A stretch of 63,585 bases of DNA, counting the filler, from Bigelowiella natans CCMP2755 (taxonomy: Eukaryota; Protista; Cercozoa): NCBI GenBank assembly GCA_000320545.1. It is 4 parts of 4 records of this genome, joined end to end, with 100 filler letters (N's around TTAATTAATTAA, not from the genome) between each part and the next. Parts side by side here need not be neighbours in the genome. Positions count along the whole stretch, not along the records: positions 28,800 to 52,735 come from ADNK01000975.1; 3 more parts are not named here. One strand, 5' to 3'. This document shows, piece after piece, positions 28,800 through 52,735 of the stretch. Each line of letters begins with the position of its first letter. The stretch's first letter is position 1. A program made the position numbers and the translations under genes. The notes under the pieces are model-generated. The model had not been told where the DNA came from and ran no database searches. It saw only the letters and a program-made list of their open reading frames with translations.

Positions 28800-28825
28800 T
28801 ATGTATATGAATAAATATATACATA

Positions 28826-28872
<47 letters not shown>

Positions 28873-28893
28873 AATATGACAATTAAGTATAAC

Positions 28894-29149
28894 ATGCCTT
28901 GGAGCCCACGGCTTGAGGTCGCCATTCCTCTTACTAAATTGATTCTTGGCTCGCTTAAGATGAAACTCGAGACGCATTGCTACTGCTCCTGACAATAATC
29001 ATCGATACAGCAAGGGCATCATCAAAGTACAACCGGTGATATATGCATATTACATGGCTGTACTCATGAAGATACCATTTCTACCCACTTAGGGTCGTGA
29101 AGAATAAGCGAAACGAATATGCACATACCCAATACACACACACACACAT

Positions 29150-29212
<63 letters not shown>

Positions 29213-29230
29213 GGGAGATGGAAGGTATAT

Positions 29231-29272
<42 letters not shown>

Positions 29273-30760
29273 CACAATTCCTCGATTCCCCCCTTTTCCT
29301 CGATTGTACCCTGTGGGATCTCCTTGGGCAGAATTGCGTTACAGCGGCGAATAAACTCATCCTTGTCTTTCTTGCTAGGGTCATATCTGTTTGCACGTCA
29401 TTTGTGTGTCAGGTCTGTGATGATCACCTTTTGTAACACTGCCAACCACCCACCCCACCCCCCTCACTCCTGTTTCTCTCTGGTTTCTCTTTCTGCCTAC
29501 GTGTGTCCAAAACGTGTGAAGCGTGCCCGCCTAAGGGGACATGGATCGCCCTGATGAATGGATAAAGAGGGGGGGGGGGGGGGGGGGGGCTGAAAAGGAA
29601 TTCTACTCAAACATTATTCCCGCATCATTGACCCGTAGATGTACATTATAATATTATCCCCTAACCTTTTTTTTTCGAAATAAATAATATACCAACCGGT
29701 ACAATAAGCTCCCACCACGTTCCCGGTGCTGGCCCGCTGAGGGACGAGTTTTCGCAGATTCTCGCTGGCTCCAACGTGCTCTTACACAGCCAATCACATT
29801 CGTAATCCCAACTCAGAATCACATGCATAATCACATTGAAAAGCACACCGAGCTTTTTGTTGTCCCTCCCACGTATTTGGGAGAATGTACATAATGTCAA
29901 TTAATTCACCTCTTTCGCCTTTTTCTTCGCCTTCGTTCCACCGATGGCCGCACTCTTTGTTGCCGGTTTTGCCTTTGCGCAAGCATCCTGCTTGACGACT
30001 ACCCTCCTTATCTTCTCTCTCTTCCGCAGCAACGGCACACGTTTTCTGGTTCTGACTCTTGGTGTGGCAGCCCCGCTTATAGACATGGCGCTAAGGATAA
30101 TTGAAAGCAGCATGTGTACAGTAGTTGTATAATCGTGCATTCATTAGGTTGCCTCTCGCTCTATTCGTCTCCTTCGAACCTAATCATGTCACTAAGCTCG
30201 CCGTCATCCTCTTTCTGCGCCATATTTGCTGCTTCCACCTACGATAATCGTCTTTAGTGATGACTCGAAGGAAAAGAGAAACCAGTGCGTTACCCCCCCG
30301 TTCTCAGCGCCTCTGGCCTGACCCTGGGTTGCACGAAATGAGGGGTTAAAACAACAACAACAACACGATCTTGTGCCATGACATCTCAGAGTGTGATTCG
30401 ATACACAGGTTCCAGTTTTGATTCGATAGGTACAGCTGTTGACTATTTGATGGCACTGATCTCATATTGCTCACCCCTCGGAGGTAAAGAGCTCGCTTAG
30501 GCACAGCAGCTGCTGTTTCCGTCATTCGGCAACCGTCGCCGCGGCTGCCACTGGAAGCAAAAACAAGCAAAGGACAGTCACCACTTTCTTCAGATAATCG
30601 TCAAGTTAGAATGAACTCATGATATTCGCGAATATCAGTGTTTCTTCACTTGAAGTCGTCCCCCCCCCACAACAAACGGTCGCGCAGCATGCAGCCACCT
30701 GTGCATCACTGCGAAGACGACGAGGAACAAGGCCCGACAGGTACGAATCCCTCCGGACAT
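28894..30760 (-). CDS. rusA: RusA-family (Holliday junction resolvase-like) protein with N-terminal signal peptide/organelle leader, 5' part (9 exons)
   Basis: Exons 30760-30699, 30550-30475, 30323-30294, 30238-30180, 30090-29910, 29780-29697, 29550-29501, 29386-29310, 28988-~28894 are all phase-compatible. They give MSGGIRTCRALFLVVFAVMHS...LYLRGG...WELIVPGDPCPLRRARFTRFGHTYDPSKKDKDEF...IPQGAVAMRLEFHLKRAKNQFSKRNGDLKPWAPRH, matching RusA N-terminal motifs (ipG.P....R.R....G..Y.P; G.v.l.l.F...rpK). The catalytic PDxDNxxK/DD motifs are not visible and are presumably in the gap. Confidence 0.75.
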
Positions 30761-31103
30761 GCGTTGAACAAAAATCTCTATCGACGTCACTGCCTGACCA
30801 TGCGTGTTCCTGGTAGTCCCCACCCGCCTTCTCTGAGTCTCCAGTGCCGATCCCGAAGGTCTAATTTCGGGTGGGACGGGCTTCTCAGCGAGCGGCGGTT
30901 CGCCTTGTCGTCCTATGGGAATTGCGCGGCAAATAGGATCCACAAGTGTTGTCGCTCTTTAGAATTGAACGGTCAATCTGGTCCGTATTAGTTGTCGCAG
31001 CTTAAAATTCTCCCCCTGCTGCATTTTTCCGTCCCTCTCCTTATTCCGACCATTTGCTCGCCCCTCGTGCTTGCCACGACGGGAAGGGGCAGTCATCGAG
31101 AGG
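30761..31103. promoter_or_regulatory. Short (~340 nt) divergent intergenic region, probable bidirectional promoter for RusA-like and GTF3C3
   Basis: Two head-to-head start codons (30760 minus, 31104 plus). Function inferred from geometry only. Confidence 0.4.
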
Positions 31104-34100
31104 ATGGCGAGCATAGAGGACATCCTTGGGGAGATCCAGGCGGAGGAGGGAGGTGATAGCGGGGGACCGTCACAAGTAGAAGGTTCGAAAGTATGCGTGT
31201 CAGAAGGGTGAGTAGAAGTAAACTGATGCATGATAAATACACCTTAAAACAGCTCCGCAGCCTACCCCCACGCCAAGAGGAAAGAAGCGAGGGATCGGAA
31301 GCCTTTTCAGGGGAGTTGATGATATTAAAGCACGGAAGAAAAGGGACACTTTGAAGCGGAAACGGGGGTAAAGCGATCCCCACTAATAATCTGTTATTTA
31401 CTTGTACGTTCTAACTTACTTCATGATTAGTCGCAAGAAGGGAAGCGGGAGCAGCAACACGCGCCTGTCTCCAGAGGCGCAAATTTTATGGGGCAAAGCA
31501 AACTCAGCCATCATTGACCAGAACTTCGCCGTTGCAATAGACTGCTGCAAGCAGTAATGATGATCCAATCGCAACGACGGCATCATCCTTAAGTTGACTG
31601 AATGATGCTTCTCAGGGTTATCGAGCTGTCTCCCAAGGCGCACGAGCCTTACAAAACTCTTGGCTACATTTTTGAGCAAGTATGAGGCGAATTCCCACAC
31701 TCATCACAACGTTTTCAAACACTGTTTGTTTTGTTGTCAGAAAAACGACATGAAAGGGGCGCTGCAGATGAAGAACATCGCTGCTCATCTACATCCAAAG
31801 GTCTCGAATTTTCGTGCGCAAAGCCCCTGTGAGTCAATGATTATCCATGTTCTACTCGTAGGACCTGGACTTGTGGCTGGAGGTCGCCGATTTTCAAGAG
31901 AGGCTCGACAACAAAAAAGATGCATTGTATTCGATACAAAGAGTGATTCGTCGCCAGGGTAGCAGCAGCATCTATCTCATGCGGAGAATCACAGCACATG
32001 CAAAACGTCACAATAAACTGAACGCCGGCCATACAATAGGAAAATTTCCAGATGCTAGTTTACTGATGTGGCGAGGACGTTTATACGAGGATCTACACCA
32101 GAGCATTCAGGCCATCCAAACCTACGAAAAGCTGCTCAAAATATGTGTGTTTCCTATCCTAATTATTACCTAGATCCTCTCTCTCTCCCTCCCTCCCCCC
32201 CCCCTTTCTTGATTCTCCATCATTCCCACATATTGCTCGCTCCTTCCTTTCATTTGCGGATGATAATTTAGACCCAGGATATGAGAATGATCCAACAGTA
32301 GTCACCAAACTCTGCAAGCTCTACTACCCAAATCCCTCCAAGCGGACTCGAGTCGCTACGATGTTGCAAAAAGTAGCGATTAATTTGTGTGCTTGTGATG
32401 TGGCGGTGGTGTGGGGGGGGGGGGGTTATAATGTGACTTGCAGCTGTACAGAACTCGCACATCAAAAAATGTTCTTTCTGAGAAACGGTTGGTGCTTGCT
32501 AGTGTGTGGACTCCGAAGGTGCAATGGCCGATGAGAATATGGTTAACATGCTCGTGGAAGTTTTGCTGGAATCGAAGGAATTCTTGAAGGCAGCAAAAAC
32601 GATAGAGAGGCACATTGACCGCATAGAAGGGGTAAGCTTGGGGCTCTAGCCTGCAATTGCGTCCGCATCATGCCTTGTTACTCAAAGCTAAGACGAGTCT
32701 CTGTTTCTCTTCGAATCCACACTCAGCGAAAGGGAGAGGATAGCAAATGTGATTATCAATCTCTGGTTCTGAAGTTGCCAATCGATCTTCAGGTTGGGCC
32801 TCTTCTGACAGCACAACGCATTGCCTCGATTCGAGCTGATTTTCACGCCTATGCGCGCATTTATTGGCTGCATGTCTTAGGTAAAATATGGAGTCGCGTT
32901 GCTCCAGATGCATCCCCTACCTAGCAGCAGCACTGGAAATAGCATCATTAGCGCCAAGGAGGAGGGGGCAGAGAACCAGAAGGATGTCCACACAGAAGAA
33001 GAAAAGCAGGATGATTGGAAGAAACCGATCCCCCGTTGGCCTGAGAGCTGTTTTGCAAGCTTACTGAAGCACGATGCGGTACGGACCATGCATGCCGAGA
33101 ATGTTTCTGCTACTGACCTCCCCGCTCCTCGGTTCCGTTGCTGCGTCCTTCTTTCTAAAGCCGCCATTCTCCTTTTGCCTCCTCTTCTTGTGCTTATTGT
33201 GACAGGATACGATGCACGACCTCCATCGCGACGTAGCAGATGCTTGTGACGCTACGAATCGCTACGTGAGAACCACGCTCACGCTGGCCTTGCTGATACC
33301 GTGCCCATCCCCCTCCTCACCGGGCATGGATGATCCTCTCGATAATATCCCTGCCCCCCCCCTCCCTCCTCTTCAGCCAGAGATTGCACACATGTTGGCC
33401 CGTGCTTACTTGGGGGTTGCTCACAGACTCGCGAAAGGCATGCATGCAGCCCACGAGGGCGAGCTTAGCCCTGGACAAAGCCTGAGGGACCTGAAAGTCT
33501 TCGTGCTTTCGAAGTCTATGGCGGTTCCTGCCACCGCCCTCACAGCGGAAGGGCTTGCTAAAGAAGCTTACCACATGCTCGTGTCTACTGGCGAGGAGGA
33601 GACGCCAGAGAAACTACGGATGCTAGTAAACGCGTACGTCTTTGCAACAGTTGTAGGAGAGAGAGAGAGAGCATGTTAGATAGCAGCAGTAGTAGCGGTG
33701 GTGGTGATGGTGGTAGTAGTTGTAGAAGTAGTGGTCGTCGTAGTGGTAGTAGCTGTTGTTGTTGTTGTTCATTTCTCGCTTTGCCTTTCAAGCTGTGACT
33801 TAGCTGGGTGGAAGGAGAAAGCCGCTGCGATTCGCAAGAGATCCCGCAAGCGAAGAGGTGAGGGCTATCGAGCTCCATACAAAGGCAGCCGAGGCCAGAT
33901 TGCTCTGAGGGACAAGTGCCCTGAAGCGATGGCAGACATTGCTGGCATCGTTGCGGCTGTTAAGAGGGCGAAGTCTCAGTTTGAAGCTGGGATGTTTGAA
34001 GAGGTCAGCCGACCCTCCTCGATGACGATTGACGATTAGAAAACCTTCAATGATGATGATGATGGTGGTGGTGGTGGTGGTGGTGGGGGTGATGGTGATG

Positions 34101-34263
34101 GTGACGATAGCGTGTACATTTTGTTCGCCCTTCTCGCCTGGACGTTTCTCACGAACAACGCTTCGGCGCTGTTGTGTGCATGCGTCTATCACAGGTCGCC
34201 AGTATCGATGTCTGCAGCACTATGGGAGCCATTTTACTTGAATTTACCTCTTCCGAAAGCAGT

Positions 34264-34295
<32 letters not shown>

Positions 34296-35713
34296 TCCTG
34301 TGCGTGCTACGAGTAGCGAGGGGGCGAGCAAGGGATATCCCAAGGCCCCAGAGGGCTCACTGCGTCCTGCGACGAACATTGAAACACATGTAAGCAAAAC
34401 GAGTGCTAGCATAGAAAGCCCAAGCCTACATATAAAGGAAAATGCCTCCTTGCTCATCACGCAAGAACTCAGTAGCGACGATAATAAGACGACGATTGCC
34501 GGTTCAAGAAGCGCTCGTAGCAGCAGGTCGCTACGGGGCCCTCATGTGGACGAAAATGAGAAGGTGAGAACACAGCAGCAGCACTGCCACCACCACCACC
34601 ACAACCACCACCAGCATCAGCATCAGCATCAGCATCAGCAAAATATGCGAAACTATATGTTGTTCCTACTTCACACTTACGAAGAAAACAGCATGTTTCT
34701 TCTACTTACCCTGCTGCTGCTGCTGCGAGACTTCTGAGAATGCTGTGATAATTTGCGTGCTTTAGATTATCAGAGCCTACCTATCTGGGCCCTTTACAAC
34801 CCTCGTGATGTTAGTCATGCAGGTACCACACAAATTCGCTCAATCAAACATCGCACCCTGAAATCACCAGTTTCGCCCGTCTTCTCCAAAGCAGCAAATC
34901 AACAACCCCCCCCCCCCCCCATTGCAACCCTTGTTATTAAGGCTTTGGCACACATCGGGCAGCTGGAGCAAGCTGCAACGGTCTCCAAAATCTATGAGAA
35001 ATGTCGGGCGGAGACGCCGAGAATTCTGAAAGAATTCGTAGCCAACAATGGATTGAGCACGAGGGCACTAGCTGCGATACGAATAGCAGGAGCGCACATA
35101 TTCATGGAAATGGTCTGTGGATTTGTTGATGCATGATAGCGTTAGCACCAGCTGTAGCAGCGTGTAATAATTCTGACGAAAGTGGGTGTACCATTAAAAA
35201 AAGGGGGACCCAGAAAGCTCCTACGATCTGCTCCTCAAAGCATCGAAGGCATGCACACGCGCTTTTCGCTGATCGATGGGGCTGATTGGCTGATAAGAAT
35301 GTGCACGTTTCTTTCGATAGGTTCACCCACTCCCATTTGGGGCGCTCAAGCTATTTCACAAGATCGTCGAGCTATTGGGTAGACAGACGCCGCGCATAAC
35401 ACTTTCCATATGATATGAAATCCTTCTTCTTCCTCACCGTAGCTTTCATCACGTCCCCCCTTTAGGTTATCCAAAGAAATGCCAGGGTTTCCTGCAAAGA
35501 CAGTTGGAAAAATACACCGAATCTCCAGGTGCTAGCGTGTAAAGAGACTTCGTCGTTTTAGAATGCTACCATGCGTTTTGATAAATTCATATGTTGACTG
35601 TCTCGAGAAAGAATGAGCAGCTTCTCACAACCATCTTAAATTTGCAGAAGCTGCGGGGTATTTTGTTCTCAATGGCCATGTTCATTTGTCCAAAGGCAAA
35701 TTTGGGGTATATT

Positions 35714-39792: not shown

Positions 39793-52622
<12,830 letters not shown>

Positions 52623-52735
52623 TAATTGACTAAATGCCTAAATATACACACATATATATAAAGAGTGAGAGAGAGAGAGAGAGAACATATGGTGGATGCA
52701 CACATATAACACGATTGCTGATTTTTTATGCTCGT

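What the first reader, a model, noticed from the sequence alone, without database searches (positions are those of the whole stretch)
28894..30760. Intron-rich eukaryotic RusA-like resolvase with an organelle-targeting leader
Seen: nine phase-consistent exons encode a signal peptide (MSGGIRTCRALFLVVFAVMHS), a mixed-charge linker, a K/R-rich stretch (RVRTRKRVPLLRKREKIRR) and the RusA N-terminal half. Established: RusA is a prophage/bacterial Holliday junction endonuclease; eukaryotic nuclei use GEN1/MUS81/SLX1, and green plastids use MOC1 (RuvC-like). Inference: a horizontally acquired, fully domesticated RusA imported through the ER into the plastid or periplastid compartment/nucleomorph, where it could resolve recombination or replication intermediates. 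The basic stretch could act as a nucleoid- or nucleomorph-localising signal.
Basis: partly seen in the sequence, partly recalled or inferred. Interest (0 to 1): 0.82.

Follow-up and report, generated by a model that had tools for sequence, protein, structure and literature searches.

The report
Intron-split RusA-like gene in a protist
A nuclear gene of an intron-rich protist (probably a chlorarachniophyte alga) encodes the front half of a bacterial/phage RusA-type DNA-junction-cutting enzyme behind a long N-terminal extension, but the catalytic half lies beyond the end of the sequence and its cellular address is only guessed.

Summary

RusA homology is real but not visible to Pfam. The spliced fragment gets no Pfam hit. 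Against a profile built only from bona fide RusA proteins it scores 25-29 bits, with a per-test E of 8e-10 to 4e-11. The best of 2000 shuffles scores 8 bits. All 25 checked members carry PF05866, and their profile finds E. coli RusA structures. One splice junction rebuilds the family motif GHT|YDP.

The 24-nt mini-exon is probably not real, so I prefer eight exons.

All catalytic residues (D-x-D-N, K, DD) fall about four codons beyond the piece edge, so activity cannot be judged.

The neighbouring BEACH gene's closest named homologue is from the chlorarachniophyte Amorphochlora. A signal-plus-transit leader is therefore biologically plausible.

The N-terminus is still ambiguous. Two internal ATGs would give a nuclear-type or a presequence-type start instead. 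No localisation predictor or transcript was available.

Verdict: a eukaryotic, intron-bearing RusA-family gene is well supported. Organelle or nucleomorph targeting and resolvase activity remain inference.

The parts
30699..30760 (-). Exon 1 (model): ATG plus the signal-peptide-like N-terminus MSGGIRTCRALFLVVFAVMH(S)
   Evidence: First ATG of its frame, with donor AG|GTGGCT. It holds the only strongly hydrophobic window of the protein. The Kozak context is weak and a 4-codon uORF lies about 30 nt upstream (read). Not validated by homology.
30475..30550 (-). Exon 2 (model): GSRGDGCRMTETAAAVPKRALYLRG
   Evidence: Strong pyrimidine-rich acceptor (ttgcttgtttttgcttccag) and GTGAGC donor. Only one frame is open across it, and that frame matches the phase left by exon 1.
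30294..30323 (-). Exon 3 (model): GQARGAENGG
   Evidence: CAG acceptor and GTAACG donor, phase 0 to 0. Weakly supported.
30180..30214 (-). Exon 4 (model): acidic KEDDGELSDMI. An alternative start ATG lies at 30223-30221, immediately upstream and in frame
   Evidence: Best codon-usage score per codon of all exons. Its acceptor is purine-rich. The in-frame ATG at 30223 has A at -3 and G at +4, so this could be the first coding exon.
29910..30090 (-). Exon 5: K/R-rich region with RVRTRKRVPLLRKREKIRR and KAKKKAKE. It contains an internal ATG at 30086
   Evidence: Lies in a stop-free stretch of 79 codons. Net charge is +17 over 60 residues. It joins the RusA exon in phase 0.
29501..29589 (-). Exon 6: Pro7 (from a C21 run), then SLSIHQGDPCPLRRARFTRFGH(T), the start of the RusA-like domain
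   Evidence: Top-scoring segment of 979 six-frame segments of the whole piece against the RusA profile, E 0.048. It aligns to the family's P-x-P-x-x-R-P-R-F-t-r-G motif.
29387..29500 (-). Intron inside the RusA domain (114 nt, GT..AG, phase 2)
   Evidence: Removing it rebuilds GHT|YDP. The same motif is contiguous in bacterial RusA P0350 (RFTRQGHTYDP) and in L008.
29310..29386 (-). Exon 7: YDPSKKDKDEFIRRCNAILPKEIPQ
   Evidence: Collinear with RusA profile positions after the motif. Good codon-usage score.
29064..29087 (-). Doubtful 24-nt mini-exon (VGRNGIFM), probably part of a 321-nt intron
   Evidence: Its length is a multiple of 3. Leaving it out raises the profile score from 25.2 to 29.2 bits and restores the conserved Gly before the beta-strand.
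28894..28988 (-). Last visible exon: (G/R)AVAMRLEFHLKRAKNQFSKRNGDLKPWAPRH, ending just before the expected catalytic K-P-D-x-D-N motif
   Evidence: Aligns to the family's 'G-p-l-k-v-e-v-t-F-y-i-k-x-P-k-s' strand and loop. Family members have His 3-4 residues before PDxDN.
28800..28893 (-). Start of the next intron (GTTATA donor, (GA)19 microsatellite), then the piece edge
   Evidence: No coding continuation is visible. The catalytic half of the gene is outside the available sequence.
30761..31105 (.). 345-bp divergent intergenic region shared with a plus-strand TPR-repeat gene that starts at 31106
   Evidence: ORFs and weak TPR Pfam hits on the plus strand. The layout suggests a bidirectional promoter; this is inference.

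Best explanation
This is a nuclear gene of an intron-rich protist, most likely a chlorarachniophyte such as Bigelowiella or a relative. It was acquired from a bacterium or prophage and now carries spliceosomal introns, at least two of them inside the acquired domain.

Its product has about 135 residues of eukaryote-specific N-terminal extension. The extension comprises a hydrophobic signal-like start, a mixed or acidic patch, a very basic K/R-rich region and a Pro7 hinge. A RusA-family domain follows.

By homology, the complete protein would be a small homodimeric, Mg2+-dependent endonuclease that resolves Holliday junctions by paired nicks, using an Asp cluster and a Lys that lie in the C-terminal half.

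The extension most plausibly sends the enzyme out of the cytosol to a DNA-containing compartment. If the first ATG is used, that is the complex plastid, periplastid space or nucleomorph, reached through the ER.

Shown: the gene structure of the domain part, homology to RusA, and the eukaryotic context. Inferred: catalytic competence, the true start codon and the destination.
For: Homology:
- BLASTP to the annotated RusA-like protein of Streptococcus phage 7A5 is collinear over four model exons, at 27.7 bits.
- All 120 homologues of that phage protein carry PF05866.
- A profile of 122 diverse representatives, retrieved without using the window sequence, scores the spliced fragment at 25.2 bits, E 7.6e-10. 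The eight-exon version scores 29.2 bits, E 4.4e-11. The best of 2000 shuffles scores 8.0 bits.
- 25 of 25 representatives checked, including the closest ones, are PF05866. Their profile hits E. coli RusA 1Q8R and 2H8C at E 1e-10.
- 6 of 8 conserved N-half columns are kept.
- An unbiased six-frame scan of the 24-kb piece ranks the first RusA exon top.

Eukaryotic gene:
- All introns are GT-AG, and the junctions restore the family motifs GHT|YDP and Q|G|AVAM.
- The neighbours are a TPR gene and a giant BEACH gene.

Host:
- The BEACH protein's nearest named homologue is from Amorphochlora amoebiformis.
- Gene architecture fits the B. natans statistics in PMC12730881.

Leader:
- There is a single hydrophobic stretch at residues 7-19. 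The 35 residues after it have net charge +3.
- Chlorarachniophyte plastid, PPC and nucleomorph proteins use a signal peptide plus a transit-peptide-like leader (PMC3542566).
Against: - Pfam's own RusA model reports nothing for the fragment or for single exons, even at E<=10. PHROGs reports nothing for single exons.
- The catalytic half is missing, so the protein could be inactive.
- Exons 1-3 have no homology support.
- The ATG at 30760 has a weak context and a tiny uORF upstream.
- The in-frame ATGs at 30223 (good context) and 30086 would give proteins without a signal peptide.
- The acidic patch KEDDGELSD is atypical of transit peptides.
- No SignalP/TargetP-type predictor and no transcript data were available.
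- No eukaryotic orthologue was found, though the tools could not really search for one.
Confidence: 0.6

Rival explanations
1. It is the same RusA-family gene, but translation starts at an internal ATG. A start at 30223 gives MAQKEDDGELSD...; a start at 30086 gives MSISGAATPRVRTRKR.... The protein then has no signal peptide. The K/R-rich region would act as a nuclear localisation signal or DNA-binding tail (host nucleus), or as a mitochondrial-type presequence.
For: - The ATG at 30223 has A at -3 and G at +4. The modelled acceptor just after it is purine-rich.
- Exon 5 has net charge +17 with RKR...RKREKIRR and KAKKKAKE.
- The 30086 start yields an S/T/A/R-rich, acid-free N-terminus.
- Exons 1-3 lack homology support and score near zero on codon usage.
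Against: - Exon 2 has the best splice sites of the gene. It is open only in the frame set by exon 1.
- Under ribosome scanning, the upstream ATG at 30760 would be used if it is in the transcript.
- The divergent promoter region lies upstream of 30760.
Confidence: 0.25
2. It is a RusA-derived relic. The gene is truncated, catalytically dead or a pseudogene, and is kept, if at all, for DNA binding only.
For: - The catalytic half is not visible.
- Two conserved Pro positions are Ala.
- Pfam does not recognise the fragment.
- Microsatellites and a C21 run lie in or next to exons.
Against: - There are no in-frame stops in any domain exon.
- Splice sites are clean and the junctions restore the motifs.
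- 6 of 8 conserved N-half positions are retained, and the profile score is 29 bits.
- The truncation coincides with the edge of the assembled piece, not with a biological end.
Confidence: 0.1
3. The RusA resemblance is a chance match produced by picking exons to fit.
For: - No Pfam or PHROGs hit.
- The fragment is short and basic.
- The exon choice was guided partly by eye.
Against: - Per-test E is 4e-11 to 8e-10 against an independently built profile, and shuffles reach at most 8 bits.
- The first domain exon is the top hit of 979 unspliced six-frame segments.
- The alignment is collinear and starts at the family's N-terminus.
Confidence: 0.03

Closest known systems
RusA family crossover junction endodeoxyribonucleases of Firmicutes prophages. 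Examples: Streptococcus phage 7A5 RusA-like protein, Atopobacter phocae WP_025728437.1, Apilactobacillus micheneri WP_140924955.1
   Same: The N-terminal half is collinear: beta-strand, then D/E-P-x-P-x-x-R-x-R-F-T-R-x-G-H-T-Y-D-P-x-K, a helix, G-x-hydrophobic strand-F, a basic loop and His before the catalytic motif. Single-sequence phmmer scores reach 20 bits.
   Different: The window protein is encoded by a spliced nuclear gene and carries about 135 extra N-terminal residues. Two conserved Pro positions are Ala. The C-terminal catalytic half is unseen. The bacterial and phage proteins are 120-160 aa, single-domain and intronless.
E. coli RusA (DLP12 prophage; PDB 1Q8R, 2H8C, 2H8E)
   Same: Same Pfam family as the intermediates that link them (PF05866). 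The expected mechanism, homodimeric Mg2+-dependent Holliday junction resolution, is taken from this enzyme (established knowledge).
   Different: There is no detectable pairwise similarity to the window fragment. E. coli RusA lacks the RPRF...YDP motif type. Its catalytic residues have no visible counterpart here because of the truncation.
MOC1, the RuvC-like Holliday junction resolvase of green plastids (PMC7078210)
   Same: Possible functional analogy: a nucleus-encoded junction resolvase serving an organelle genome.
   Different: It belongs to an unrelated fold and family. No sequence relationship was tested or expected. Whether this host also has MOC1 was not examined.

Membership tests
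RusA (Pfam PF05866) | Match to the Pfam RusA profile at or above its gathering score | tested here: not met
   The 88-aa spliced fragment and the single exons give 0 families even at E<=10. The fragment covers only the weakly conserved N-terminal half.
RusA (Pfam PF05866) | Significant, collinear homology to bona fide family members | tested here: met
   An independent profile of 122 representatives gives 25.2 bits (E 7.6e-10), or 29.2 bits (E 4.4e-11) without the mini-exon. Shuffles reach at most 8.0 bits. 25 of 25 members are PF05866. The profile hits 1Q8R and 2H8C.
RusA (Pfam PF05866) | Conserved N-half residues (P, R, P, R, G, Y, F, P in the alignment of 25 members) | tested here: met
   6 of 8 are kept. 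The two differences are Pro to Ala.
RusA (Pfam PF05866) | Catalytic acidic cluster and Lys (D-x-D-N...K...DD; Asp70, Asp72, Lys76, Asp91 in E. coli RusA, numbering from memory) | not testable with these tools
   All these alignment columns lie beyond the last visible residue. The exon ends at 28894 and the piece ends at 28800.
RusA (Pfam PF05866) | RusA fold and homodimer; cleavage of four-way junctions | not testable with these tools
   The spliced protein could not be handed to the structure or remote search tools. The activity test needs an experiment.
Bipartite plastid/PPC/nucleomorph leader of chlorarachniophytes (signal peptide plus transit-peptide-like region) | N-terminal signal peptide | tested here: inconclusive
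   The n-region has 2 Arg. The hydrophobic core ALFLVVFAVM has a Kyte-Doolittle mean of 3.28, followed by small residues H-S-G-S. No dedicated predictor was available. The start codon is unverified, with alternative ATGs at 30223 and 30086.
Bipartite plastid/PPC/nucleomorph leader of chlorarachniophytes (signal peptide plus transit-peptide-like region) | Transit-peptide-like region with net positive charge after the signal peptide | tested here: inconclusive
   The next 35 residues have net charge +3, followed by an acidic patch (net -4) and then a +17 basic region. The literature states that plastid and PPC/nucleomorph leaders cannot yet be told apart (PMC3542566).
Bipartite plastid/PPC/nucleomorph leader of chlorarachniophytes (signal peptide plus transit-peptide-like region) | Host organism has a complex plastid | tested here: inconclusive
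   The nearest named homologue of the neighbouring BEACH protein is from Amorphochlora amoebiformis, at 43% identity. GC content and intron statistics resemble B. natans. The organism itself was not identified.

The most novel reading that the evidence does not exclude
The enzyme is imported through the ER into the periplastid compartment. Its basic region then takes it into the nucleomorph, where a phage-type RusA resolves recombination or replication intermediates of the relic eukaryotic chromosomes. A bacterial-virus resolvase would then be serving a eukaryotic (endosymbiont) nucleus that has lost its own junction-processing enzymes.
Probability: 0.1. Interest if true: 0.8.

Novelty: new member of a known kind. 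Interest (0 to 1): 0.5.

Why it matters
RusA is regarded as a bacterial and prophage enzyme. [quoted passage not shown] I found no paper describing a nuclear-encoded RusA.

An intron-bearing RusA gene with a targeting-type extension in a chlorarachniophyte-like alga would add a case of a horizontally acquired phage or bacterial DNA enzyme recruited for organelle genome maintenance. It would also give a concrete candidate for how junctions are resolved in a complex plastid, a mitochondrion or a nucleomorph. That candidate is testable, because chlorarachniophytes have a transfection system (PMC3542566).

The theme of bacterial or phage enzymes serving organelle DNA is well known, so this is an interesting new instance rather than a new principle.

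Tried and rejected
- Pfam and PHROGs on single exons by reference gave nothing. Pfam on the 88-aa spliced fragment gave nothing.
- The search for homologous proteins with the fragment found no candidate. Its length window (48-154 aa) excludes full-length eukaryotic orthologues.
After that I sent it to no other remote tool. No structure prediction and no library-wide search with the protein itself were done.
- E. coli RusA and the SPP1 'gene 44' product showed no useful pairwise similarity.
- I aligned exon fragments onto a RusA scaffold to build a mixed profile. MAFFT misplaced the fragments, so I abandoned this.
- A brute-force enumeration of all splice paths timed out.
- I tried to recover DNA beyond 28800. 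The window's own BEACH ORF (P0001) is not in the contig index.
- Related loci from a metagenome (L002) and from Amorphochlora (L007) show no synteny and no RusA gene.
- The search for related loci rejected the exon queries as too short.
- A wobble pattern for exon 10 found nothing in metagenomes.
- The motif pattern found one AT-rich intronless RusA (L008) and the Atopobacter-type prophage copy (L009). Neither is an orthologue.
- A candidate extra exon at 29780-29666 breaks the phase and was dropped.

Full report
**What is there.** The feature lies on the minus strand. From the ATG at 30760, a chain of exons with GT donors and AG acceptors can be joined in consistent phase down to 28894.

My nine-exon version is 30760-30699, 30550-30475, 30323-30294, 30214-30180, 30090-29910, 29589-29501, 29386-29310, 29087-29064 and 28988-28894.

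After 28894 come a GTTATA donor and a (GA)19 microsatellite, then the edge of the piece at 28800. The gene is cut there by the assembly, not by a stop codon.

A candidate extra exon (29780-29666) breaks the phase and was dropped.

A codon-usage score trained on the large BEACH exons gives +19.8 for the chosen frame. The other two frames score -67 and -95. The in-frame score beats the off-frames in eight of nine exons. This is modest support, because phase-consistent GT-AG paths are easy to find.

**Is it RusA?** The direct tests were negative.
- Pfam reports nothing for single exons or for the 88-residue spliced fragment, even at E<=10.
- PHROGs reports nothing for the exons.
- There is no pairwise similarity to E. 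coli RusA.

I then fetched annotated Gram-positive phage RusA-like genes. The Streptococcus phage 7A5 protein aligns collinearly with the fragment across the exon junctions, at 27.7 bits and 30% identity over 64 residues. All 120 listed homologues of that phage protein carry PF05866.

A profile of 60 of those homologues scores the fragment at 9.4 bits, per-test E 7e-5. The best of 2000 shuffles scores 4.3 bits.

To widen the profile without using the window sequence, I searched the 1.84-billion-protein representative library with the N-terminal halves of 20 of them. I built a local profile from 122 of the resulting representatives.
- The fragment scores 25.2 bits, E 7.6e-10 for the single test. 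The best shuffle scores 8.0 bits.
- Run against all 979 stop-free six-frame segments of the 24-kb piece, the same profile ranks the first domain exon (29613-29500, minus strand) top, at E 0.048. The last exon also appears, at the right profile positions.
- Twenty-five representatives, including those closest to the fragment, are all PF05866. Their profile hits the E. coli RusA structures 1Q8R and 2H8C at E 1e-10.
- Six of the eight conserved N-half columns are kept: P, R, R, G, Y and F. Two Pro positions are Ala.

I conclude that the fragment is homologous to the N-terminal half of RusA-family proteins. Pfam misses it because most of the family signal sits in the C-terminal half.

**Gene structure of the domain.** The 114-nt intron 29500-29387 splits the motif GHT|YDP. 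That motif is contiguous in bacterial members, as RFTRQGHTYDP in Atopobacter phocae RusA and RFTRNGHTYDPSKKKK in metagenome contig L008. This validates the intron.

The 24-nt exon 29087-29064 is a multiple of three. Omitting it keeps the frame and gives ...EIPQ-G-AVAMRLEF.... It restores the conserved Gly before the strand and raises the score to 29.2 bits, E 4.4e-11, with an almost gapless alignment. I therefore prefer an eight-exon model of 215 visible residues.

These introns, plus the neighbouring TPR and BEACH genes, rule out bacterial contamination.

**What cannot be seen.** In the family alignment, the last visible residue (His) sits three to four positions before K-P-D-x-D-N. All catalytic columns (D, D, N, K, D, DD, K) lie beyond the edge. 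Catalytic competence is therefore untested.

I could not extend the sequence.
- The window's own ORF is not in the contig index.
- Related loci show no synteny.
- Pattern scans of metagenome and viral collections found only bacterial or prophage relatives.

**Host.** The best non-self hits of the BEACH ORF are 43-45% identical. One of these clusters contains a protein of the chlorarachniophyte Amorphochlora amoebiformis.

The window's GC content is about 0.4-0.57. Its introns are short (75-320 nt) and dense, and its exons are short. This resembles Bigelowiella natans (GC 45%, 7.8 introns per gene, mean intron 184 bp) and not Amorphochlora (GC 27%), according to PMC12730881. The host is thus probably a chlorarachniophyte or close relative, but this is not proven.

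**The leader.** Residues 7-19 form the only strongly hydrophobic stretch, with a Kyte-Doolittle mean up to 3.28. They are preceded by two Arg and followed by H-S-G-S. The next 35 residues have net charge +3. An acidic patch follows (net -4), then a 60-residue region of net +17, then Pro7.

In chlorarachniophytes, plastid, periplastid and nucleomorph proteins all use a signal peptide plus a transit-peptide-like region. The classes cannot yet be told apart (PMC3542566).

However, exons 1-3 have no homology support. The ATG at 30760 has a weak context and a 4-codon uORF upstream. Two in-frame ATGs further down would give proteins without a signal peptide:
- 30223 has A at -3 and G at +4 and would start the protein MAQKEDD....
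- 30086 would start it MSISGAATPRVRTRKR....

The first looks nuclear and the second presequence-like. No predictor or transcript was available to decide between them.

**Comparison with what is known, and novelty.** The closest named relatives are RusA proteins of Lactobacillales prophages. That ranking is biased by my choice of seed, and the N-half is too short for a reliable tree.

In the searchable literature I found no description of a nuclear-encoded eukaryotic RusA. One paper states that RusA homologues are absent from almost all eukaryotes (PMC3403352). From memory, domain databases list scattered eukaryotic RusA-domain proteins, but I could not check this.

I file this as a new member of a known enzyme family in an unusual host and architecture. 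The family assignment rests on the N-terminal half only.

**Confidence.**
- RusA-family homology: about 0.9.
- Real spliced nuclear gene: about 0.9.
- Active resolvase: about 0.55.
- Routing to the plastid complex through the ER: about 0.4.
- Nucleomorph specifically: about 0.1.

Noticed in passing
window 40428-52735 (+): A giant BEACH-domain (neurobeachin/LRBA-like) gene runs off the end of the piece. It includes single exons of 726 and 2179 codons, rich in homopolymeric amino-acid runs (S, G, D, Q, M, T). Its closest named homologue is from the chlorarachniophyte Amorphochlora amoebiformis at 43% identity. That orthologue spans 36.7 kb of genome.
   Followed up: partly
window 31106-35200 (+): A multi-exon gene diverges from the RusA-like gene across a 345-bp spacer. 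One ORF gives weak TPR hits, below the Pfam cut-offs. By eye it resembles a TFIIIC TPR subunit, but this was not tested.
   Followed up: partly
window 29569-29589 (-): A run of 21 C, read as Pro7, sits exactly at the start of the first RusA exon. A homopolymer length error would shift the frame. An alternative in-frame acceptor at 29550 would skip it, at the cost of the first beta-strand.
   Followed up: partly
window 28831-28868, 29150-29218, 29226-29269: (GA)n, (AG)n and (TA)n microsatellites plus a (GT)n tract fill the introns of the RusA-like gene. One of them abuts the piece edge, which may be why the assembly breaks there.
   Followed up: no
L008 1-401 (+), JGI metagenome contig Ga0074045_10269048: An AT-rich (38% GC) intronless RusA-family ORF, cut at its 5' end. 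It shares RFTR-GHTYDPSKK with the window protein and has an intact KPDTDN...DD half. The rest of the protein is diverged, so it is not an orthologue.
   Followed up: partly
L002 250-2340 (+), ENA metagenome scaffold: The compact, apparently intron-poor eukaryote-like scaffold that carries the 45%-identical BEACH homologue also encodes a protein with an Anthrax_toxA (adenylate cyclase-type) Pfam hit. Only the precomputed annotation was seen.
   Followed up: no
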